Positions 21,887 through 47,960 of a stretch of 64,000 nucleotides of DNA are shown piece after piece (the first letter of the stretch is position 1; every line of letters starts with the position of its first letter). Made by a program: the position numbers and the translations under genes. The DNA lies in assembly GCF_039654945.1 (NCBI RefSeq), contig NW_027361669.1, forward strand, positions 20,894,001 to 20,958,000. The letters are read 5' to 3'. The notes beneath the pieces were generated by a model, which made no database searches, was not told the DNA's origin, and saw only the letters and a program-made list of their open reading frames with translations. This DNA is from Dendrobates tinctorius (Eukaryota).

Positions 21887-23514
<1,628 letters not shown>

Positions 23515-26500: not shown

Positions 26501-27445
26501 TATAAGATTAATAATGGAGAGGCATCTTATTGACGCCTCTTCATTGTTAACCGGGCTTAATGTCACCTTACAATAGCAAGGTGACATTAACCCCTTATTA
26601 CCCCACTTGCAACAGCTGCACAGCAGTGAGAAGAGATGGGCTAAGTGCCGGAATTAGCACATCTTAGAAATGCGCTATTTCTGGGGTGGCTGCGGGCTTG
26701 AATTTGTTGCCAGAGGGGCCAATATCCATGGCCCCTTCCTAGGCTATGAATATCAGCCCACAGCTGTCTGCATAACCTTTTTGGCTATTAATTTTAGGGG
26801 GACCCCATGTCATTTTTTTGGGAGGCCCCCTATTTTAATAGCCAGTAAAGGCTGTGCTGACAGCTGCGGACTGATATTCATAGCCGGGGAAGGGGCTATG
26901 GGTATTACCCCCTTCCCAGGCTATAAACATCCGCCCCCAGTGGCTGGCTTTCCCTCTCTGGACTTGAAAATTGTGTGGGAGCCCAAGGAATTTTTTTTCC
27001 ATTTTTAAAAAAATTAAACATATTGCGTTTAAGGTGGGTCACACTTTACAAAAAACTCACACGAGTCTCGCACCTCAATACCCGCCACTGCTACCGGCAC
27101 TCAGGATCGGAGTGTGCGGCTGCATGTATTTCTATGCAGCTAAAAGCTCCGGTCCGAGTGCTGGTGGCAGTGCCGGGTATTGAGGTGCGAGGCTCATGGT
27201 AGTTTCTCGTAAGGCTGGGATCAGACATGAGAGGAATAAGGCCAAGTCTCGCATGTTAACACCTGGCACTGCCGCCGGCCTCAGGAGCGGAGCGTGCGGC
27301 CGCAAAGCAATACATGGAGCCGCACGCTCCGCTCCCAAGGCCATGAAGAGGAGGATGAATGAACTCATGGAGATCAACATCCGACACTGCGGAGACACCA
27401 TCACGTGTTTCTCAACGCAGTGATTCTAGAGCACTGCCCCCATCC

Positions 27446-27474
27446 CTTATGGGAAATATGCAAAACATGCAAAA
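27446..27474 (-). promoter_or_regulatory. Putative snRNA-type distal element (two octamer-like TTTTGCAT plus SPH/Staf-like ATTTCCCATAAG), present in each unit
   Basis: Minus strand ttttgcatgttttgcatatttcccataag; 7/8 match to ATTTGCAT. Confidence 0.4.
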
Positions 27475-27608
27475 CAGAAGCCGCGGAGACACCATCACGT
27501 GTTTCTCAACGCAAGCAATGACCAGCCAGGTCTTTGTCCGGGAAGGAACAACCACGGGAAGGGCAGTCTCCAATGAAGGAAACCACCTATGCCAAAACAT
27601 GGTATCCA

Positions 27609-27652
27609 TCCACATACAGCTGTTTCGGGGTATTGCCCCTCATCAGTGTGGA
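27609..27652 (-). ncRNA. Type I hammerhead ribozyme, array unit 1
   Basis: UCCACA CUGAUGA GGGG-CAAUA-CCCC GAAA CAGCU GUA^UGUGGA; perfect core, predicted cleavage at 27615/27614. Confidence 0.93.
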
Positions 27653-27960
27653 GTAGGAAACTGGCTGGTAGGAGCAATGCCTAGTAAAAAGACTATGAAG
27701 AGGAGGATGAATGAACTCATGGAGATCAACATCCGACACTGCGGAGACACCATCACGTGTTTCTCAACGCAGTGATTCTAGAGCACTGCCCCCATCCCTT
27801 ATGGGAAATATGCAAAACATGCAAAACAGAAGCCGCGGAGACACCATCACGTGTTTCTCAACGCAAGCAATGACCAGCCAGGTCTTTGTCCGGGAAGGAA
27901 CAACCACGGGAAGGGCAGTCTCCAATGAAGGAAACCACCTATGCCAAAACATGGTATCCA

Positions 27961-28004
27961 TCCACATACAGCTGTTTCGGGGTATTGCCCCTCATCAGTG
28001 TGGA
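27961..28004 (-). ncRNA. Type I hammerhead ribozyme, array unit 2
   Basis: Identical to unit 1. Confidence 0.93.
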
Positions 28005-28312
28005 GTAGGAAACTGGCTGGTAGGAGCAATGCCTAGTAAAAAGACTATGAAGAGGAGGATGAATGAACTCATGGAGATCAACATCCGACACTGCGGAGAC
28101 ACCATCACGTGTTTCTCAACGCAGTGATTCTAGAGCACTGCCCCCATCCCTTATGGGAAATATGCAAAACATGCAAAACAGAAGCCGCGGAGACACCATC
28201 ACGTGTTTCTCAACGCAAGCAATGACCAGCCAGGTCTTTGTCCGGGAAGGAACAACCACGGGAAGGGCAGTCTCCAATGAAGGAAACCACCTATGCCAAA
28301 ACATGATATCCA

Positions 28313-28356
28313 TCCACATACAGCTGTTTCGGGGTATTGCCCCTCATCAGTGTGGA
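28313..28356 (-). ncRNA. Type I hammerhead ribozyme, array unit 3
   Basis: Identical to unit 1. Confidence 0.93.
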
Positions 28357-28664
28357 GTAGGAAACTGGCTGGTAGGAGCAATGCCTAGTAAAAAGACTAT
28401 GAAGAGGAGGATGAATGAACTCATGGAGATCAACATCCGACACTGCGGAGACACCATCACGTGTTTCTCAACGCAGTGATTCTAGAGCACTGCCCCCATC
28501 CCTTATGGGAAATATGCAAAACATGCAAAACAGAAGCCGCGGAGACACCATCACGTGTTTCTCAACGCAAGCAATGACCAGCCAGGTCTTTGTCCGGGAA
28601 GGAACAACCACGGGAAGGGCAGTCTCCAATGAAGGAAACCACCTATGCCAAAACATGGTATCCA

Positions 28665-28708
28665 TCCACATACAGCTGTTTCGGGGTATTGCCCCTCATC
28701 AGTGTGGA
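28665..28708 (-). ncRNA. Type I hammerhead ribozyme, array unit 4
   Basis: Identical to unit 1. Confidence 0.93.
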
Positions 28709-29016
28709 GTAGGAAACTGGCTGGTAGGAGCAATGCCTAGTAAAAAGACTATGAAGAGGAGGATGAATGAACTCATGGAGATCAACATCCGACACTGCGG
28801 AGACACCATCACGTGTTTCTCAACGCAGTGATTCTAGAGCACTGCCCCCATCCCTTATGGGAAATATGCAAAACATGCAAAACAGAAGCCGCGGAGACAC
28901 CATCACGTGTTTCTCAACGCAAGCAATGACCAGCCAGGTCTTTGTCCGGGAAGGAACAACCACGGGAAGGGCAGTCTCCAATGAAGGAAACCACCTATGC
29001 CAAAACATGGTATCCA

Positions 29017-29060
29017 TCCACATACAGCTGTTTCGGGGTATTGCCCCTCATCAGTGTGGA
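29017..29060 (-). ncRNA. Type I hammerhead ribozyme, array unit 5
   Basis: Identical to unit 1. Confidence 0.93.
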
Positions 29061-29368
29061 GTAGGAAACTGGCTGGTAGGAGCAATGCCTAGTAAAAAGA
29101 CTATGAAGAGGAGGATGAATGAACTCATGGAGATCAACATCCGACACTGCGGAGACACCATCACGTGTTTCTCAACGCAGTGATTCTAGAGCACTGCCCC
29201 CATCCCTTATGGGAAATATGCAAAACATGCAAAACAGAAGCCGCGGAGACACCATCACGTGTTTCTCAACGCAAGCAATGACCAGCCAGGTCTTTGTCCG
29301 GGAAGGAACAACCACGGGAAGGGCAGTCTCCAATGAAGGAAACCACCTATGCCAAAACATGGTATCCA

Positions 29369-29412
29369 TCCACATACAGCTGTTTCGGGGTATTGCCCCT
29401 CATCAGTGTGGA
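29369..29412 (-). ncRNA. Type I hammerhead ribozyme, array unit 6
   Basis: Identical to unit 1. Confidence 0.93.
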
Positions 29413-29579
29413 GTAGGAAACTGGCTGGTAGGAGCAATGCCTAGTAAAAAGACTATGAAGAGGAGGATGAATGAACCCAAGGCCGGCGGTAGTGTCGGGT
29501 GTTAACATGCGAGACTCAGCCGTATTTCTTGCATGTCTGATCCCGGCCTAAAGTGTGACCCTGGCCTAACACAGATTTT

Positions 29580-29918
29580 TTCTATCAATAGATATATCTA
29601 TCTATCTATGCAGATATCTAACTATCGATAGATATATCTATCGATAGACAGATATATCTTTCAATAGATAGATCTATAGATAGATTGTTAGATTATATCT
29701 ATAGATAGTTAGATATGGGATAGATAGATAGATAGATAGATAGATATGGGATAGATAGATAGATAGATATGAGATAGATAGATTGATATGGTGGGATAGA
29801 TAGATAAATAGATAGATATGGGATAGATATATAGATCTATCTATAGATATAATCTAGCGATCTATCTATCTATCTGTCTATCTATCCCATAGCTATCTAT
29901 CTATCTATCTAAATATCT
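29580..29918. repeat. Degenerate (GATA)n/(TATC)n microsatellite
   Basis: Runs of gata and tatc. Confidence 0.9.
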
Positions 29919-36753: not shown

Positions 36754-39700
36754 ATGAGAATTTGGTGGTACATATCTCTTCTCATGAACTATCTGAAGTG
36801 GATTGTGTGGTATTATCTAAGGGACTATCTTTTCGCCCCACAAATTCCCGATTGGTTTGATATCGAGTGTGACTTGTTTTCTTTTTTTAGAAGGCTACGG
36901 TTGACTTCTTTCTTTTCTGATAAAAATGAATTACCACGTGAGTTGGATGATGATGGATCTACTGGTTTTACACTCCAGGGTGTGGGTCTGTACAGTAAGA
37001 GTAATTTTCAGCCTCCTGCTAGGAATAATTTTGTTGAATCATATATCCAGTTGGTGGAGAGGGATATTCTACAATTAAGAAGTGAATTTCGAAATTTGGG
37101 TACGGGGAACCTTACACATGTGGAAAAACAAGCGTTGAGTAGACTCTCTAACAACACTACCATCACAATCAAATCTGCCGATAAAGGCGGCGCGGTGGTA
37201 GTGATGGATACAGATAAATATAAAGCAGAGATTATGAGTCAATTATCTGATGTAGCGGTATATACTAAATTAACTAGTGATCCTACTTCTCGTTTTTCAA
37301 CTGAAATGCACCTTTTAATCGATGAGTCCCTTTCTAATGGACTCATTGATCAGAAGCTATCTGAATTTTTGTTGGTTGATGCTCCTCAGACACCAATATT
37401 GTATACGTTGCCAAAAATTCATAAGAATCTTGAAAATCCCCACGGACGCCCTATTGTGTCCGGGAGGGGTTCACTTTGTAACAAGGTCTCAATTTTCCTG
37501 GACAAGGTATTGCGTCGCTTTGCTATTTCGGCACGCTCTTATGTTTTTAATACAAATGATTTATTGGATAAGATTCATGATGTTAAGGTCACTCCCCATA
37601 TGGTGTTGGCGTCTTTTGACGTGGTTTCTCTATATACGTCCATAGAACACGATAGAGGTTTAGAGGCGTCGATGTGGTGCTATCGGGCTCTGACATGGCT
37701 CCTGAGTGTGCACAACTGGTCCTCGCACTGTTAGGTTTCATCCTCAGGAGGAATTTTTTCCTCTTTGGGGATGATTGCTACCTACAGTTGCGGGGTACCG
37801 CCATGGGGTCCAATGTGGCCCCCACTTATGCTAACATCTATATGGCGGTATTCGAGGACCAGCATGTGTACAGTTCCATCTATTGGAGCTATGTCAGGGC
37901 CTGGTGGCGCTACATCGACGATATTTTTTGTATTTGGGAAGGGAGTGTGGATGATCTCCTTGGTTTGCAAAATGAATTAAACAATGTGTTCCCTGAGCTA
38001 AAAGTTACATTGACCCATTCTTTGGACCAGGTCCAATTTTTGGACACACTGGTCTATAAGAAGGGGGAGTCTTTATGCACTGATCTCTTTGTTAAAGAGA
38101 CAGACAGAAATAGTCTTCTTGTGCATGATAGTAATCACCCAAGAAGGATGGTTGAGTCACTCCCATGGAGTCAGATACTGCAGGTATGAAGAATTGTTAA
38201 AGAAGAGGATAAGTTGGATAGGAGATTGGATCAAACGTGTACAAAATTTATCAATAGATGTTATCCAATTAATAGGGTTAAACAATATAAAAATAAGGCT
38301 TTGGATTTGCCAGTTGAGGATCTATGCCGTAAACGTGAAAAGGTATCTACTAGGCGTGTCCCTTGTGTTTCGACTTTCTGTCCGGTTAGTGGCAGGATTG
38401 GAGGAATTTTGAATAAGCATTGGAGTCTTTTACAGAAGGGTTTGCCACATGTAACTGAGTTTGTTGATAGACCCCTGCTGTCCTATAGATGAGGTGTCAT
38501 GATCCAAGGTGGATCTGACAGTTTAAATGCACAAAGTGAAATTTTTTCCTTTGGCTTGGTGCCAAAGTGGGTTGATTGCCCCCAGTGGCCATTAGAATTA
38601 TTACACGTGGTGTCGTTCATTCTAAGTTGCCCCGGTGGTGGTGAGTGGTAGTGCACTGTAGTTTCTTTGGCTTAATGTGCACTTAATTACAAATCAGGTG
38701 TTAGGCTCTATAAAAGGGAGCCAGGTGTGTTCAATCATGATTGGTGATATTGTGTTCGTCATTTGGGAAGCAGGCCTGGGAGATGAAGGAGCTGAACATG
38801 AGTTCTGCGCAGCCCAGCCAGAGGGGACGAGTGGCAGCTAGGTGGTCTGCAAGAAGGGCTGGCATGGCGTGGTGGAGTCACAGTTTATGGTGTCGGCAGG
38901 AAGTGCTTGCATGGCTTGGTGGAGTGACGACTATGGAGAGAGTTGCACTCAGCATGCGGGACTTGGTTGCTGAGAGCTGGACTCAAGCATGCTTGACTTT
39001 TTGGGCAGGAGCTGAACTAATCTTTGGGACTCTGTTACTGGACAGCTGCAACTGGTGGTGGACTCTGCTCCAAGGCTGCACTATGGTGAAGGATCCAGTT
39101 ATGGTGATGGATCCGGGTGGAGGAGAAGATGCACACAGGAGGTGGGCTCTGTTGCTAGGAGCGTGTGCGCAACAGAGCAAAGCTAAGTGGTGTTTCCCCT
39201 GTATTGTCATTTTCCCTCATGTGTGTTTAGTGCAGTGGTGTGATTAGTTTCCGCACCGACCAATTCCCTAGTGAGGGTTTAAGTTCAGGGCGAGCTAGGG
39301 TTTTTAGGTTCCTGTGCGTCGCTCTGTGCGGAACCGGCATAGGGAACGTTAGGAGTGCAGGGACACTGGCTCAGGGGAGTACAGGAGGTCTCCACTTCCC
39401 TATTCCCTATTGCAGGGCCCACCATTGTTAATGTTACCCAGGTTCCCCTTTATTATTTAAATTCGCCTTACTGGAGGCGGGGTTTCCAGACTACTGTAGG
39501 TATAACGTGTAATACCTAAATTCGCCAGTTGGAGGCAGCGTATCCAGCTGCACGTTTTATTATTTAAATTCGCCCCACTGGAGGCGCTGTATCCAGGGTC
39601 ACGTGTATCTTATGGGTTCGCCTTGTGGTACTCGCTGCGTCCAGACACACGTGACCGTGACACGAGGGTATAATTTAAAAGATAAATTGGTTAAATCTGA

Positions 39701-42879: not shown

Positions 42880-45800
42880 CTATGTGTCATCAGGGGAAGG
42901 TGGGACAAAATCCTTGGAAACCCATGCGTGGTTCATTTTAATGAAGGTTAGATCATCCACATTTTGGGTTGACAGACGGGTCCTTTTTTCTGTCAGGATT
43001 GATCCAGCTGCACTGAAGACTCTTTCCGATAGCACACTTGCAGCTGGGCAAGCGAGCTCCTGTAAGGCATATTGGGCCAATTCAGGCCAGGTGTCCAGTT
43101 TAGCGGCCCAATAGTCAAAGGGGAATGACCTGTGTGGGAGAACATCGATATGGGAGGAAAAGTAGTTTGTAACCATAGTTGACAACTGCTGTCTCCTGTC
43201 ACTTTCCATCGATGCAGTATTACCAGTTGTGTGAGCGGTATTTGAAAAATCAGTCCACAACATTGTCATGAAACCCCTGTCTCCAACGCCACTTCTGCTG
43301 TGTGCACCACGAACACCTCTGCCAAGCTGCCCCCGGCCCGTACGGCTCGTGTGAGAACCATCACCGCTGCTGTGTGCTGGGAATGCCTCAAGCAACCGAT
43401 TTACCAGAGTTGCTTGTTTATTAGCCAATATTAGGTCAAGGTTCTCCTGTGGCATGATGTTTTGTAATTTGCCTTTATAGCGTGGATCCAGGATGCTGGC
43501 CAACCAGCAGTCGTCATCGTTCATCATTTTGGCAATGCGGGGGTCCCTTTTTAGGATCCGCAAGGCATAATCTGACATGTGGGCCAATGTTCCCGGTGTC
43601 AATGATGCACTGCGAGTGCTGGGTGGAGGAGCACTTTCTGGCAAATCCACATCCCTCCAGTCACGCACAAACCCTGTACCAGACCTTGCCACGCCAACAT
43701 TTTCACTTGCCCCACGAGATGCATCCTCCTCCCCTAAGTAATCATCCCCATCATCCTCCTCCTCTTCTTCCTCCACCTCGTCCAGGAGAGGTCCCTGAGC
43801 AGACAATGGCTGAATGTCATCAAGGATTCCCTCCTCCTCTTCCTCCTCATCAACATTGGCTGCAGACGCCTGCTCCTTAAGGTGCGTCAAAGTTTGCATG
43901 AGCAGACGCATAAGTGGGATGCTCATGCTTAGGATGGCGTCGTCTGCGCTTACCAGCTGTGTGCATTCCTCAAAACACTGAAGGACTTTACAAAGGTGTT
44001 TCAGCTTCGACCACTGCACGCCTGTCAACTCCATGTCTGCTCTCAAAGTGCCTGGCCGTGTATCCTCCCACAAATGCATTATGGCCTGCCTCTGCTCGCA
44101 CAGCCGCTCCACCATATGCAGGGTGGAGTTCCATCTTGTTGCAATGTCGATAATGAGGCGGTGGTTGGGAAGGTGGAGCAATCGCTGCAGCTTCTGCATA
44201 CGAACGGAGTGTACAGGCGACCGGCGGATGTGCGCGCACAGTCTTCGCACCTTCTGGAGCAGGGCTGTTAACTCCGGATAATTTTTGAGGAAGCACTGCA
44301 CCACCAGGTTCAAGGTGTGAGCCAAGCAAGGTATGTGGCTGAGTTTTGAAAGGGCTATGGCTGCCACAAAATTACGGCCGTTATCACTAACTACCTTGCC
44401 TGCCTCAAGATGTACACTGCCCAGCCATGACTCAGTTTGTCGCTTCAAGTACTCGGCCAGCACCTCGGCGGTGTGTCTGTCGCCCAAACACATCATCTGC
44501 AACACAGCCTGCTGACGCTTTCCACTAGCTGCTCGATAGGGGGACACATCGTGTGCAACAGTGGCAGCTGCAGATGGAGTGCTCGTACGACTGCGCTCTG
44601 TGGACGAGCTTTCGCTTCTGGAGAAGGAGGAGGAGGAGGGTCGAACGCCTACAGCCAACTGTTTCCTATACCGTGGGCTAGGCAGCACTGTCCCACCACC
44701 GCTGTCCCCTGTGGACCCTGCATCCACCACATTAACCCAGTGCGAAGTGATGGACACGTAACGGCCCTGGCCATGCCGACTGGACCATGCATCAGTTGTG
44801 AGGTGCACCTTTCCGCTCACTGACTGCTTGAGTGCATGGACAATGCGGTCTTTCACATGATGGTGGAGGGCTGGGATGGCTTTGCGAGAGAAGAAGTGGC
44901 GACTGGGTAGGTCATAGCGTGGTACTGCATAGGCCATGAGTTCGCGGAAAGCTGTGCTTTCCACCAACCGAAAGGGCATCATCTCAAACGAGATTAGTTT
45001 GGCAATGTGGGCGTTCAAACCCAGTGTACGCGGATGAGAGACTGAGTACTTTCTTGACCTACTCATAGTGTCTGGGAGGGTGAGCTGGACTTGAGAGCTG
45101 CATATGGTGGAAGTAGCGGTGGACAGGGCGGACTGAGAGAGGGTTGATGATGGTGATGGAGTTGGTGTTCTTTCTGATGGCCTAGAATCAGTCTTTCGTT
45201 GATATAACAGTGGGATTCCCTGACTGCTGTGGTCTTGCAACGACACCTCAACATTTGCTGCTGTGCTAACCGGTGGGCTTACAGTGGGGGAAACAATGTA
45301 GCGTTGCTGACTACCTTCGTTGTGATCAGTTGCACATGTGGCACTTGAGGTTTGGTGTTGTGTCCACGCTTGCAAGTGCATGCTGGTAAAATGTCTAAGC
45401 ATGCAACTGGTATTCAAATTTTTCAGATTTTTCCCTCGGCTAAAGGTCTTTGCGCACTTCTTACAGATAACCTTGGCCTGATCATGAGGATTTTGTTCAA
45501 AAAAGTGCCATACTGCACTCTTCCTACTTTGGCAGACATTTTGCGGCTTAGCACGCTGTGATCTTTTGACCCTCTGGACAAGCTGTCCAGCAACTCTTTT
45601 GATGTTTGGAACCTGTCTTTGGAGTGCTCCGGGCCTGCCAGATAACAGCTGTTGCGATGTCGATGTCTGCTGTGGATGCTCCTCATCTGAGCTATTGGAA
45701 GCAGCACCCTCTTCCCCCAATGGATGCCATTCTGGGTCAACAACTGGGTCATCCATCACCTCCTCTTCTATGTCATGTGCACCTTTCTCTGTGTCACCGT

Positions 45801-46413
45801 GTATGGTGGTATAGTGTGCGGGAAGGGGCACCTGAGTCTCATCAGGGTCAAAATCTGGCTCTGTACACTGCGAGGACAATGTAGTGCTCTGAGTGAATGT
45901 ACCAGCAGAATCATCCATCAGCGGCAGTTCATCAGTGCACTCCATGTCAGATTCATCTTGGCCTGGGTAATTCACCATTTCACTTGATAATCCAGGCATG
46001 GTATGTGAAAACAGCTCCATGGAGTAATCAGTAGTATGGCCTGCGTCATCCTTCAATCTTGGTTGGGGTGAAGGACACAAGGAAAGGTGTGGTTCATGAA
46101 CATGAGCCTCCAATGACGACTCAGTGCTTTTACTTTTTACAACTGAAGAAGAGGAGGCGATAGAGCTGGAGGCTGAGTCAGCAATGTAAGACAAAACTTT
46201 TTCCTGATGCTCTGCCTTTAAAAGCGGTTTGCCAACTCCTAGAAAACTAAGCGTTCGAGGCCTTATGTAGCCAGACGATGACTCAGGGTCAGCACCTCCT
46301 GCATTCGGTCCTATTTTGCTCTTGCCACTACCATCAGATCCACCACCAACACCATCATTACCAGCTGCCAACCCCCGCCCAATTCCACGGCCTCTTCCAC
46401 CAGCCTTCCTCAT
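42880..46413 (-). CDS. hAT transposase with BED zinc finger (ZBED-like), 1177 aa from the first ATG
   Basis: Uninterrupted ORF: VWHFF..CKKC..HFTSMH (BED), LTTDAW, VSDNG, PCLAH, TRWNS, ACPAASVLSERVFS (DDE triad and dimerisation domain). Confidence 0.93.
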   Translation of the reverse strand: MRKAGGRGRGIGRGLAAGNDGVGGGSDGSGKSKIGPNAGGADPESSSGYIRPRTLSFLGVGKPLLKAEHQEKVLSYIADSASSSIASSSSVVKSKSTESSLEAHVHEPHLSLCPSPQPRLKDDAGHTTDYSMELFSHTMPGLSSEMVNYPGQDESDMECTDELPLMDDSAGTFTQSTTLSSQCTEPDFDPDETQVPLPAHYTTIHGDTEKGAHDIEEEVMDDPVVDPEWHPLGEEGAASNSSDEEHPQQTSTSQQLLSGRPGALQRQVPNIKRVAGQLVQRVKRSQRAKPQNVCQSRKSAVWHFFEQNPHDQAKVICKKCAKTFSRGKNLKNLNTSCMLRHFTSMHLQAWTQHQTSSATCATDHNEGSQQRYIVSPTVSPPVSTAANVEVSLQDHSSQGIPLLYQRKTDSRPSERTPTPSPSSTLSQSALSTATSTICSSQVQLTLPDTMSRSRKYSVSHPRTLGLNAHIAKLISFEMMPFRLVESTAFRELMAYAVPRYDLPSRHFFSRKAIPALHHHVKDRIVHALKQSVSGKVHLTTDAWSSRHGQGRYVSITSHWVNVVDAGSTGDSGGGTVLPSPRYRKQLAVGVRPSSSSFSRSESSSTERSRTSTPSAAATVAHDVSPYRAASGKRQQAVLQMMCLGDRHTAEVLAEYLKRQTESWLGSVHLEAGKVVSDNGRNFVAAIALSKLSHIPCLAHTLNLVVQCFLKNYPELTALLQKVRRLCAHIRRSPVHSVRMQKLQRLLHLPNHRLIIDIATRWNSTLHMVERLCEQRQAIMHLWEDTRPGTLRADMELTGVQWSKLKHLCKVLQCFEECTQLVSADDAILSMSIPLMRLLMQTLTHLKEQASAANVDEEEEEEGILDDIQPLSAQGPLLDEVEEEEEEDDGDDYLGEEDASRGASENVGVARSGTGFVRDWRDVDLPESAPPPSTRSASLTPGTLAHMSDYALRILKRDPRIAKMMNDDDCWLASILDPRYKGKLQNIMPQENLDLILANKQATLVNRLLEAFPAHSSGDGSHTSRTGRGQLGRGVRGAHSRSGVGDRGFMTMLWTDFSNTAHTTGNTASMESDRRQQLSTMVTNYFSSHIDVLPHRSFPFDYWAAKLDTWPELAQYALQELACPAASVLSERVFSAAGSILTEKRTRLSTQNVDDLTFIKMNHAWVSKDFVPPSPDDT

Positions 46414-46479
46414 TTTGGTAGAAATGTAGACAAAATCCAACAAACTATATAGTAATGTAAAACAAGGTACAAGGTGTCT

Positions 46480-47960
46480 ATAGGACAGGGGAGATTTAGA
46501 ATTTCTGCACACACTTGTAGACAGTGGACACTTTTGGATTGTGTGAGGCCCACTGATATCTGAGCGCTATGTGACAGGCTCGATGGCACAGCTGCCTGTG
46601 ACCAAAGTGACGAGAGGATAATGGAGATTTTGAATCTCTGCGCACACTTTTGGACACTGGACACTTGTGGATTGTGTGAGGCCCACTGATATCTGAGCGC
46701 TATGTGACACGCTCGATGACACAGCTGCCTGTGACCAAAGTGACGAGAGGATAATGGAGATTTTGAATCTCTGCGCACACTTTTGGACACTGGACACTTG
46801 TGGATTGTGTGAGGCCCACTGATATCTGAGCGCTATGTGACAGGCTCGATGGCACAGCGCTGCCTGTGACAAAAGTGATGAGAGGATAATGGAGATTTTG
46901 AATCTCTGCGCACACTTTTGGACACTGGACACTTGTGGATTGTGTGAGGCCCACTGATATCTAAGCGCTATGTGACACGCTCGATGGCACAGCTGCCTGT
47001 GACCAAAGTGACGAGAGGATAATGGAGATTTTGAATCTCTGCGCACACTTTTGGACACTGGACACTTGTGGATTGTGTGAGGCCCACTGATATCTGAGCG
47101 CTATGTGACAGGCTCGATGGCACAGCTGCCTGTGACCAAAGTGACGAGAGGATAATGGAGATTTTGAATCTCCGCGCACACTTTTGGACACTGGACAGTT
47201 GTGGATTGTGTGAGGCCCACTGATATCTGAGCGCTATGTGACACGCTCGATGGCACAGCTGCCTGTGACCAAAGTGACGAGAGGATAATGGAGATTTTGA
47301 ATCTCTGCGCACACTTTTGGACACTGGACACTTGTGGATTGTGTGAGGCCCACTGATATCTGAGCGCTATGTGACATGCTCGATGGCACAGCTGCCTGTG
47401 ACCAAAGTGACGAGAGGATAATGGAGATTTTGAATCTCTGCGCACACTTTTGGACACTGGACACTTGTGGATTGTGTGAGGCCCACTGATATCTGAGCGC
47501 TATGTGACACGCTCGATGGCACAGCTGCCTGTGACCAAAGTGACGAGAGGATAATGGATATTTTGAATCTCTGCGCACACTTTTGGACACTGGACACTTG
47601 TGGATTGTGTGAGGCCCACTGATATCTGAGCGCTATGTGACAGGCTCGATGGCACAGCTGCCTGTGACCAAAGTGACGAGAGGATAATGGAGATTTTGAA
47701 TCTCTGCGCACACTTTTGGACACTGGACACTTGTGGATTGTGTGAGGCCCACTGATATCTGAGCGCTATGTGACACGCTCGATGGCACAGCTGCCTGTGC
47801 CCAAAGTGACGAGAGGATAATGGAGATTTTGAATCTGCGCACACTTTTGGACACTGGACACTTGTGGATTGTGTGAGGCCCACTGATATCTGAGCGCTAT
47901 GTGACAGGCTCGATGGCACAGCTGTGACAAAAGTGACTAGAGGATAAGGGAGATTGGATT
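46480..47960 (+). repeat. 133-bp tandem repeat (~11 copies) immediately upstream of the hAT start codon
   Basis: ctatgtgaca recurs at 46567, 46700, 46833, 46968 ... 47897. Confidence 0.95.

What the first reader, a model, noticed from the sequence alone, without database searches (positions are those of the whole stretch)
27343..29475. Very young hammerhead-ribozyme tandem array (retrozyme) inserted as one event with a TSD
Seen: six 352-bp units, each with a perfect type I hammerhead core on the minus strand (stem I UCCACA/UGUGGA, CUGAUGA, stem II GGGG/CCCC, GAAA, GUA cleavage triplet). I noticed one difference among units (28306). A 9-bp direct repeat CCCAAGGCC flanks the array, and removing the array restores the palindromic MITE B. 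Known: newt satellite 2 and metazoan non-LTR retrozymes are few-hundred-bp hammerhead repeats whose transcripts self-cleave and can circularise. Inference: a non-coding, recently mobile RNA element of a frog family that I cannot match to a named family, predicted to give 352-nt monomer/circular RNAs.
Basis: partly seen in the sequence, partly recalled or inferred. Interest (0 to 1): 0.93.

Follow-up and report, generated by a model that had tools for sequence, protein, structure and literature searches.

The report
Young hammerhead retrozyme array, Penelope-type insertion
This is a real, very recent insertion of six copies of a 352-bp self-cleaving-ribozyme repeat (a "retrozyme", a kind already known in amphibians), and its many sister copies in the genome carry the marks expected if one small circular RNA is copied round and round by a Penelope-type retroelement enzyme.

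Summary
Window 27343-29475 holds six 352-bp units plus 21 nt, with one difference among units (28306). Each unit carries a complete type I hammerhead on the minus strand. A 9-bp target duplication flanks the array (27334-27342 and 29476-29484), and one copy restores the host MITE.

It is one member of a large dispersed family: 2,888 identical GUA hammerheads, 7,638 GUC ones, and 15,471 within two mismatches.

Across 21 insertions:
- 16 have duplications of 9-16 bp.
- Outer ends fall at two fixed internal sites, A and B.
- The opposite ends are random.
- 14 are head-to-head inverted twins. Nine have both ends at A or B, and all nine pair one A with one B.
- Variants are either shared by every unit of an array, both arms included, or unique to one unit.

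This matches published Penelope-like element behaviour: both DNA strands primed, with internal start sites. It favours one monomer, probably a circular RNA, copied repeatedly.

Not shown here: transcription, self-cleavage, RNA circles, or the partner element.

The kind is known (amphibian non-LTR retrozymes), so this is a new member. The scan had already noted Penelope-type tandem-plus-flipped insertions and other hammerhead tandems elsewhere in this genome.

The parts
27334..27342 (.). Left copy of the 9-bp target-site duplication CCCAAGGCC
   Evidence: The shortest of the 16 duplications found in the family (median 14 bp).
27343..29475 (-). Retrozyme array of six 352-bp units plus 21 nt. The hammerhead-sense strand is the minus strand, so its 3' end lies at 27343 (fixed terminus B) and its 5' end at 29475 (unit position 21).
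27609..27652 (-). Hammerhead 1 (44 nt). Predicted cleavage after A at 27615, between 27615 and 27614.
   Evidence: Two such segments co-fold as a double hammerhead.
27961..28004 (-). Hammerhead 2
28313..28356 (-). Hammerhead 3. The only variant of the array (28306 G>A) lies 7 nt outside it.
28665..28708 (-). Hammerhead 4
29017..29060 (-). Hammerhead 5
29369..29412 (-). Hammerhead 6
27466..27470 (-). Site A in the first unit (unit positions 124-128, start of CATGCAAAACAG). This is the second recurrent outer terminus in sister arrays. It is internal and unused in this array.
27389..27419 (.). First copy of a 31-nt direct repeat inside the unit (unit positions 47-77). On the sense RNA it lies 5' of site B.
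27483..27513 (.). Second copy of the 31-nt internal repeat (unit positions 141-171). On the sense RNA it lies 5' of site A.
29476..29484 (.). Right copy of the target-site duplication CCCAAGGCC
27212..27342 (.). Left part of the interrupted palindromic host MITE
   Evidence: (inverted repeats I2 and I13)
29476..29549 (.). Right part of the interrupted host MITE
   Evidence: (inverted repeat I2, 86% complementary to 27212-27281)

Best explanation
The array is one insertion of a non-coding, non-LTR retrozyme.

Shown here:
- Six near-identical 352-bp units, each with an intact type I hammerhead whose helix III (ACAGCUGU) is a palindrome.
- A target duplication around the whole array.
- Membership of a dispersed family of several hundred to a few thousand insertions.

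Inferred mechanism:
1. Minus-strand transcripts cut themselves at GUA|U. Cutting probably needs two hammerheads paired as a double hammerhead, as in newt and axolotl.
2. The 352-nt monomers are closed into circles by a host RNA ligase.
3. A Penelope-like element (PLE) reverse transcriptase-endonuclease, supplied in trans, makes a staggered cut of 9-16 bp in the target.
4. It starts DNA synthesis at one of two fixed internal sites on the hammerhead-sense RNA. Site B gives a cDNA beginning ATGAAGAGG and is the one used in this window. Site A gives a cDNA beginning (C)ATGCAAAACAG.
5. The enzyme runs round the circle several times, here six turns plus 21 nt.
6. In two thirds of sister insertions the other DNA strand primes as well, giving a head-to-head inverted twin with A at one outer end and B at the other.

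My odds for the separate claims:
- Retrozyme inserted as a multimer in one event: about 0.9.
- Mobilised by PLE-type machinery: about 0.75.
- Template was a circular monomer rather than a linear multimer: about 0.6-0.7.
For: Array, hammerheads and duplication.

Family size: 2,888 exact GUA hammerheads, 7,638 exact GUC, and 15,471 within two mismatches. Reversed-pattern controls gave 0.

Architecture of 21 insertions (20 fetched loci plus the window):
- 16 of 21 have duplications of 9-16 bp.
- Outer ends cluster at unit position 1-3 (B) or 124-133 (A). Both are 3' ends of the hammerhead-sense strand.
- Inner ends are scattered over the unit and are not at the cleavage site.
- 14 of 21 are inverted twins. 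All 14, plus 3 GUC-subfamily twins seen by coordinates, have the sense 5' ends meeting in the middle.
- In the 9 twins where both ends are canonical, one end is A and the other B. None is A/A or B/B.
- Junction-specific genome scans found no B/B pair among all 69 B junctions, and no A/A pair with distinct flanks among the first 100 of 915 A-type hits.

Clonality: in 134 unit pieces, variants are either fixed in every unit of an array, both arms included (L035, L044 and L048 carry private ones), or seen in a single unit. Variants shared by only some units are rare.

Multi-unit at birth: near-zero-age arrays are already long (L044: 9.4 units, 0 singletons in 3,226 bp; window: 1 in 2,112 bp).

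Folding: two hammerhead segments co-fold as a double hammerhead with an 8-bp helix III (-46.5 against 2 x -20.3 kcal/mol). The monomer folds at -131.5 kcal/mol, z = -5.2.

PLE presence: the genome encodes intact PLE ORFs. There are 5,686 GIY-YIG candidates with open frames of 828-855 aa. L051 has an 839-aa frame with RVT_1 plus a C-terminal GIY-YIG domain.

Literature:
- The anole PLE protein cuts and extends both strands and starts at two internal, non-homologous RNA sites (PMC11167929).
- PLE insertions show 5' truncation, partial tandems, an inverted 5'-truncated copy, and a tail at one end only (PMC8557442).
- Amphibian retrozymes of about 330-353 nt have a weak helix III, cleave as dimers, and form circles via RtcB (PMC7229834).
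- The circle-to-multimeric-cDNA model and the PLE candidacy are published (PMC7761336; bioRxiv 10.64898/2026.07.22.740005).
Against: - No RNA evidence. The four runs laid are only guessed to be RNA and are held as contigs, which cannot show ends, strand or circles.
- Rfam's curated models do not reach threshold: no hit at gathering, and only Hammerhead_3 at 16 bits against a cut-off of 48.5.
- The one PLE fetched (L051) shares no sequence with the unit and showed no hammerhead in 4 kb, so no partner is identified.
- In the anole system unprocessed linear RNA was the main substrate, and start sites did not differ between strands. Both points differ from what I infer here.
- Sites A and B lie about 125 nt apart, not the 30-40 nt of published PLE tails.
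- The sample is 21 insertions, chosen through an exact hammerhead match on three contigs.
Confidence: 0.8

Rival explanations
1. PLE-type insertion, but the template was a linear multimeric (uncleaved) transcript of a source array rather than a circular monomer.
For: In vitro, hammerhead-dead and unprocessed RNA served the anole PLE equally well, and no reads ended at the cleavage site (PMC11167929). Inner ends of the arrays are not enriched at the hammerhead cleavage site. Young source arrays are themselves homogeneous, so their transcripts would also give homogeneous daughter arrays.
Against: Private variants are fixed in all 10-14 unit pieces of an array, including both arms (L035, L044, L048). 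That requires a single-unit bottleneck before each such insertion. Under 5' truncation of linear multimers, daughter arrays could only get shorter, yet derived sublineages include arrays of 8-13 units. Variants shared by only some units, which would be inherited from a source, are rare.
Confidence: 0.25
2. A monomer or dimer inserted, and the six units then arose in place by unequal crossing-over or replication slippage. This is the satellite-birth model discussed by Li et al. 2026.
For: Such growth would keep the duplication and both termini. A few older arrays (L031, L045, L048) have variants shared by 2-4 units, which suggests some local duplication. The model is proposed in bioRxiv 10.64898/2026.07.22.740005.
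Against: The youngest arrays are already long (L044: 9.4 units with no singleton; window: 6 units with one; L035: 13 units with four). Both arms of twins are multi-unit and share the same private variants. Arrays are short, dispersed and flanked by duplications, not a few long blocks.
Confidence: 0.08
3. The unit count is an assembly artefact, from collapse or expansion of a tandem repeat.
For: Not checked against raw long reads. The only DNA runs holding the full sequence come from the sample that may be the source of the assembly, and they are held only as contigs.
Against: The array is 2.1 kb in a 24-Mb contig of an 830-contig, 6.36-Gb assembly. That contiguity suggests long reads that would span the array easily (inference). 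One unit carries a private variant (28306), and both junctions are unique sequence.
Confidence: 0.03
4. A DNA-level mechanism with no RNA step, such as integration of extrachromosomal circular DNA or rolling-circle replication.
For: Tandem multimers could also arise from rolling-circle replication of a DNA circle.
Against: Fixed ends on one strand polarity only, random opposite ends, staggered-cut duplications of 9-16 bp, short filler or microhomology at junctions, and strictly head-to-head twins are the signature of target-primed reverse transcription from both strands. They are not the signature of DNA-circle integration.
Confidence: 0.03

Closest known systems
Amphibian non-LTR retrozymes: axolotl Rtz_353 / HHR_Amex2, Rtz_331, and newt satellite 2 (Cervera & de la Pena 2020, PMC7229834; Epstein & Gall 1987 as cited there)
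   Same: Tandem non-coding units of about 330-353 bp. One type I hammerhead per unit, with a weak helix III (2 bp plus a tetraloop here, as in HHR_Amex2). Dimer-dependent cleavage is expected. Duplications are longer than 4 bp when present.
   Different: Sequence relatedness to the salamander units was not tested. The family here is in short dispersed arrays of 0.5-13 units in the sample, and up to about 30 units in twin arrays seen by coordinates. RNA circles have not been shown here.
Xenopus non-LTR retrozyme families and their proposed origin from PLE pseudo-LTRs (Li, Clavereau & Pollet 2026, bioRxiv 10.64898/2026.07.22.740005)
   Same: Same class of element. PLEs co-occur in the genome. 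Most families have at most about seven units per array.
   Different: That work argues from phylogeny and co-occurrence and discusses local amplification by unequal crossover. It reports no duplications, termini or inverted arms. Here the link to PLEs rests on insertion architecture. Similarity of the unit to a PLE pseudo-LTR was not established.
Penelope-like elements (Poseidon of Anolis, PMC11167929; Naiad/Chlamys, PMC8557442)
   Same: Both target strands are cut and extended. Reverse transcription starts at two internal RNA sites that are not homologous to the target. Insertions show 5' truncation, partial tandems, an inverted 5'-truncated copy, an extension at one end only, and hammerheads that act as dimers.
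   Different: There is no ORF, so the element is non-autonomous. The two start sites are about 125 nt apart rather than 30-40 nt. Within a twin, the two sites are used one per strand. Arrays are whole-number multimers of a 352-nt unit.
Plant LTR retrozymes (PMC4918200)
   Same: Non-autonomous retroelements whose hammerhead-processed RNA accumulates as circles.
   Different: Plant elements have type III hammerheads, LTRs with a primer-binding site and polypurine tract, 4-bp duplications, and Gypsy-type mobilisation.
Avocado sunblotch viroid / newt double-hammerhead (Forster et al. 1988, as cited in PMC7761336)
   Same: A short helix III that becomes a long intermolecular helix when two motifs pair. 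Here that is an 8-bp ACAGCUGU duplex predicted by co-folding.
   Different: This element is encoded in the genome and spreads by retrotransposition. It is not an autonomously replicating RNA.

Membership tests
Hammerhead ribozyme, type I | Conserved core (CUGANGA, GAA, A15.1-U16.1, H17 not G), with helices I and II paired and helix I open | tested here: met
   All six units read UCCACA-CUGAUGA-GGGG(CAAUA)CCCC-GAAA-C(AGCU)G-UA|UGUGGA on the minus strand. Folds show helices I and II.
Hammerhead ribozyme, type I | Score at or above Rfam's gathering threshold for a hammerhead model | tested here: not met
   No hit at gathering thresholds. With permissive E-values, only Hammerhead_3 at 16 bits against a cut-off of 48.5, E = 2.6. 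That type III alignment lacks a helix I hairpin and is rejected. The very short helix III probably costs the score (inference).
Hammerhead ribozyme, type I | Self-cleavage at H17 | not testable with these tools
   Needs in vitro transcription. Co-folding predicts a double hammerhead.
Non-LTR retrozyme (Cervera & de la Pena 2020) | Tandem repeats of about 170-400 bp with a type I hammerhead in each unit | tested here: met
   352-bp period, with 6 of 6 units intact.
Non-LTR retrozyme (Cervera & de la Pena 2020) | Non-coding, with no LTR, primer-binding site or polypurine tract | tested here: met
   Every frame of the reiterated unit has stops on both strands. The array ends directly at the duplication with no terminal repeats.
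Non-LTR retrozyme (Cervera & de la Pena 2020) | Dispersed copies with target duplications longer than 4 bp | tested here: met
   16 of 21 insertions have duplications of 9-16 bp.
Non-LTR retrozyme (Cervera & de la Pena 2020) | Expressed as linear and circular monomer RNA | tested here: inconclusive
   Contigs of four runs guessed to be RNA, from two species labels, hold the unit. Run type is unconfirmed and contigs cannot show ends or circles.
PLE-mobilised non-autonomous element | Fixed 3' start sites internal to the RNA, variable 5' ends, and inverted 5'-truncated copies from priming on both strands | tested here: met
   Termini A and B, scattered inner ends, and 14 of 21 head-to-head twins. 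17 of 17 twins are in the same orientation.
PLE-mobilised non-autonomous element | Intact autonomous PLEs (RT plus GIY-YIG) in the same genome | tested here: met
   (L051: 839-aa frame with RVT_1 and GIY-YIG).
PLE-mobilised non-autonomous element | Sequence similarity of the unit to the pseudo-LTR or 5' region of a resident PLE | tested here: inconclusive
   One PLE was examined (L051) and shows no similarity.
Classical satellite DNA grown by unequal crossing-over | Long arrays at few loci, no target duplications, and variants shared by subsets of neighbouring units | tested here: not met
   Arrays are short, dispersed and flanked by duplications. Variants are either fixed across an array or seen in a single unit.

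The most novel reading that the evidence does not exclude
The insertion scars of this family may record how animal retrozymes move. One circular 352-nt RNA would be held by a two-subunit Penelope-type enzyme and copied by rolling-circle reverse transcription from two different internal start sites. Each of the two cut DNA strands would use one site, A or B. That would explain why twins are always head-to-head, always pair A with B, and are clonal in both arms. If so, tandem retrozyme 'satellites' are born as multimers in single events and do not grow by unequal crossing-over.
Probability: 0.35. Interest if true: 0.72.

Novelty: new member of a known kind. Interest (0 to 1): 0.5.

Why it matters
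Retrozymes and their circular RNAs are known. How the animal ones move is still a model: the published proposals are a circle copied into multimeric cDNA, and helper enzymes from Penelope-like elements. The latest survey itself says it has little evidence on the life cycle.

This family is large, very young and cleanly assembled, so its insertion sites can be read directly. They show duplications, two fixed internal start sites, head-to-head twin arrays with one start site per end, and arrays that are clonal copies of a single unit. This makes the mobilisation question testable, both in this genome and at the bench with the resident Penelope-type proteins.

The array in the window is by itself an ordinary member of a known class.

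Tried and rejected
- Rfam. At curated thresholds there was no hit. With permissive E-values there was only a 16-bit Hammerhead_3 alignment. I reject that type III reading because it has no helix I hairpin and its helix III is mismatched.
- BLAST-type DNA search of the own genome with the unit found nothing. The tool skips very common words, so this is not evidence of rarity. Pattern searches replaced it.
- Partner PLE. One intact PLE (L051) was fetched. It has no similarity to the unit and no CUGAUGA...GAAA motif in 4 kb.
They were shortened or replaced by plain letters.
- RNA evidence. All are contig sets, so no ends, strand or circle junctions could be read. As a result, empty-site alleles and copy number were not tested in other individuals.
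- Coding potential. No frame stays open around the unit on either strand.
- Other CUGAUGA...GAAA matches in the window (11121, 42843, 59030) number about what chance predicts and are not hammerheads.
- An apparent lack of duplication at L034 was resolved. Its two blocks are one twin insertion, split by a nested 5.4-kb LTR element.
Full report
**1. The observation**

Tandem Repeats Finder reports one array at 27343-29476 with period 352, 6.1 copies, 99% matches and no indels. Read directly, the array is 27343-29475, which is six units plus 21 nt.

On the minus strand each unit reads UCCACA-CUGAUGA-GGGG(CAAUA)CCCC-GAAA-C(AGCU)G-UA|UGUGGA. This is a complete hammerhead core with helix I open, so it is type I. 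Helix III has two base pairs plus a tetraloop, and the cleavage triplet is GUA. In the first unit the predicted cut lies between 27615 and 27614.

The 44-nt segment is identical in all six units. The only difference among units is G>A at 28306.

CCCAAGGCC stands at 27334-27342 and again at 29476-29484. When both copies are left in, alignment to the adjacent MITE paralogue and to the MITE's own other arm opens an 8-9 nt gap exactly at the second copy (inverted repeats I2 and I13). The duplication is therefore real, and a single copy restores the host element.

Rfam does not call the motif. There is nothing at gathering thresholds. Under permissive settings there is only a 16-bit Hammerhead_3 alignment, which I reject on structure.

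**2. A large, dispersed, young family**

The genome is 6.36 Gb in 830 contigs. Counts of the 44-nt hammerhead:

| Variant | Copies |
|---|---|
| Exact, GUA cleavage triplet (as in the window) | 2,888 |
| Exact, GUC cleavage triplet | 7,638 |
| Within two mismatches of the GUA form | 15,471 |

Reversed-pattern controls gave 0. The copies lie in many short arrays with periods of 351-354 bp.

I fetched 20 other loci and mapped the unit on them. Together with the window they give 21 insertions. L034 counts as one insertion, because its two blocks are a single twin split by a nested LTR element.

Sixteen of the 21 have target duplications of 9-16 bp (median 14). The window's 9 bp is the shortest.

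**3. Architecture of the insertions**

Unit coordinates run from window 27343 = position 1 on the plus strand, which is antisense to the hammerhead.

- *Fixed outer ends.* Outer ends fall at two places. Site B is at position 1-3, where the array starts ATGAAGAGG. Site A is at about 124-133, where it starts (C)ATGCAAAACAG. Both are 3' ends of the hammerhead-sense strand. Neither is the hammerhead cleavage site (273|272).
- *Random opposite ends.* The opposite ends are scattered over the whole unit. This is the pattern of target-primed reverse transcription with 5' truncation, and it names the hammerhead-sense RNA as the template.
- *Shared motif at the start sites.* On that RNA both sites read CAU followed within a few nucleotides by a run of U (...UCAU|AGUCUUUUU and ...GCAU|GUUUUG). 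Site B shows little or no homology to the target. Site A often shares 1-5 nt with an A-rich primer end.
- *Inverted twins.* Fourteen of the 21 insertions are inverted twins with the sense 5' ends meeting in the middle. They are joined by 1-9 nt of microhomology or 4-11 nt of filler. Three GUC-subfamily twins seen by coordinates have the same orientation, making 17 of 17.
- *One site per end.* In the nine twins where both ends are canonical, one end is A and the other B, never A/A or B/B (0.5^9 is about 0.002 if the ends were independent). Five other twins have one canonical and one odd end.
- *Genome-wide check.* A scan for B junctions found 69 places with no B/B pair. A scan for A junctions found 915 hits, which include internal variants. 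Among the first 100 there was no A/A pair with distinct flanks, but A/B pairs were recovered.

The window's array is of the single-arm type. Its sense 3' end is at B (27343) and its sense 5' end is at unit position 21 (29475).

**4. Arrays are clonal copies of one unit**

In 134 unit pieces, variants fall into two classes:
- fixed in every unit of an array, both arms of twins included;
- singletons, present in one unit only.

Examples of the first class: L035 has three variants fixed in all 14 pieces, L044 has three in all 10 including a private one, and L048 has three in all 13 including two private ones. Variants shared by only some units are rare and confined to older arrays.

Singleton divergence runs from 0% (L044, 3,226 bp) through 0.047% (the window) to 1.3%. 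Arrays with almost no mutations are already long. They are therefore multi-unit at birth, and each descends from one monomer sequence.

Singletons hit the hammerhead at the neutral rate (21 observed, 22 expected). The 11 propagated variants all lie in unit positions 6-214 and none in 215-352. Sampling through an exact hammerhead match biases the 44 nt themselves. With those excluded the chance value is about 0.02.

Taken together, this favours rolling-circle copying of a circular monomer. It argues against growth in place by unequal crossing-over and against copying of a linear multimer. The linear-multimer rival is not excluded.

**5. RNA-level predictions**

Two 63-nt hammerhead segments co-fold into a double hammerhead. 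The palindrome ACAGCUGU forms an 8-bp intermolecular helix III, at -46.5 kcal/mol against 2 x -20.3 for two single folds. This matches the dimer-dependent cleavage of newt and axolotl motifs (PMC7229834). The monomer is strongly structured, at -131.5 kcal/mol with z = -5.2 against mononucleotide shuffles. No reading frame stays open around the unit.

Public runs: full-word holders are DNA runs of the probable source sample. Sixteen further runs, under two species labels, hold part of the stretch.

I laid four runs that are guessed, not recorded, as RNA. All are contig sets.
- They hold the unit at high word depth.
- Their dominant variant has G at 27615, which makes the cleavage triplet GUC.
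- They carry a few other subfamily differences and are diverged around unit positions 337-12.
- Within the hammerhead, only H17 and one loop II base vary.

None of this proves transcription, and no ends or circle junctions can be read from contigs.

**6. Comparison with what is known**

The class is established. It includes newt satellite 2 and the axolotl Rtz_331 and Rtz_353 retrozymes, whose circular RNAs are made with RtcB (PMC7229834). The circle-to-multimeric-cDNA model, with PLEs as candidate helpers, is published (PMC7761336). So is a 2026 survey that places retrozymes in all seven amphibians sampled and relates Xenopus families to PLE pseudo-LTRs. That survey discusses local amplification by unequal crossover. 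It reports no duplications, termini or inverted arms, and it states that it has limited evidence on the life cycle.

The architecture seen here matches PLE behaviour:
- The anole enzyme cuts and extends both strands and starts at two internal, non-homologous RNA sites (PMC11167929).
- PLE insertions show 5' truncation, partial tandems, an inverted 5'-truncated copy, and an extension at one end only (PMC8557442).

Differences from the published PLE picture:
- The two sites are about 125 nt apart, not 30-40 nt.
- In twins they are used one per strand.
- My data favour a processed circular template, whereas the anole assay favoured unprocessed RNA.

The genome has intact PLE ORFs.

Earlier notes of this scan report Penelope-type tandem-plus-flipped insertions of a ribozyme-less 540-bp family, and other hammerhead tandems of 401 and 490 nt, in other windows of the same genome. 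They agree with this reading but are not independent proof.

**7. Verdict**

It is a new member of a known kind, not a new kind. The added value is the family-wide insertion footprint, which makes the mobilisation mechanism of animal retrozymes directly testable.

Age. One change in 2,112 bp suggests well under a million years at commonly assumed vertebrate neutral rates of about 1e-9 per site per year. That rate is my own background figure, and the Poisson error on a single event is very wide.

Still unverified: self-cleavage, transcripts and circles, the helper element, the unit count against raw long reads, and presence or absence of the insertion in other individuals.

Noticed in passing
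L034:3071-8484 (G000:C1:17562570-17567983): A 5,414-bp element with 608-bp terminal direct repeats, TG...CA ends and a 5-bp duplication (GTCGG) is nested inside an older twin retrozyme array. It looks like an LTR retrotransposon that arrived after the array.
   Followed up: partly
window 42880-46512 (-): An uninterrupted 1,210-aa ORF with a BED zinc finger and a hAT C-terminal dimerisation domain. It is an apparently intact hAT transposase gene.
   Followed up: partly
window 22197-23177 (-): A 326-aa ORF with Tc1/Sleeping Beauty-type HTH domains and a DDE_3 domain (Tc1/mariner transposase). A second 326-aa ORF at 36754-37734 (+) has no Pfam match.
   Followed up: partly
window 29581-29911: A compound (ATAG)n/(ATCT)n microsatellite with 16-36-bp higher-order periods starts about 30 bp to the right of the interrupted MITE. 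PLEs are reported to favour microsatellites, but this insertion sits in the MITE, not in the microsatellite.
   Followed up: no
G000:C3:16003691-16011512 (coordinates only): An array of about 22 units of a 354-bp-period subfamily, with one extra A in the site A region and GUC hammerheads. This is much longer than the GUA arrays sampled.
   Followed up: no
G000:C3:7803770-7813898 (coordinates only): A large GUC-subfamily twin of about 10 units on the minus strand followed by about 20 on the plus strand, with period 351. It has the same head-to-head orientation as all the other twins.
   Followed up: no
G000:C39:36.4-40.2 Mb and C345 (coordinates only): Dozens of near-identical GIY-YIG (PLE endonuclease) matches recur, often as closely spaced opposite-strand pairs a few to about 9 kb apart. 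PLE copies appear to be embedded in a large higher-order repeat.
   Followed up: no
L051 (G000:C83:10596800-10600800, minus strand): An intact 839-aa PLE ORF (RVT_1 plus C-terminal GIY-YIG), preceded by an overlapping 208-aa frame. It has no similarity to the 352-bp unit and no canonical hammerhead core in the 4 kb fetched.
   Followed up: partly
window 27406/27442 (table 5): Contigs of two runs from one study join 27406 to 27442 on opposite strands, at summed depths of 79 and 154. This inverted junction inside the unit recurs and was not explained. It may be a propagated twin junction.
   Followed up: no
window array, L038 and L040: Three of the seven single-arm arrays are a whole number of units plus 12-21 nt (window +21, L038 +12, L040 +12). 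The sense 5' end lies just past the start site more often than chance would give (about 0.01). This is unexplained. It may be the counterpart of the PLE 'tail'.
   Followed up: partly
window 27036-27212: A second, uninterrupted copy of the palindromic MITE lies directly to the left of the interrupted one. A 13-nt perfect inverted repeat (27036-27048 with 29549-29561) brackets both copies.
   Followed up: partly
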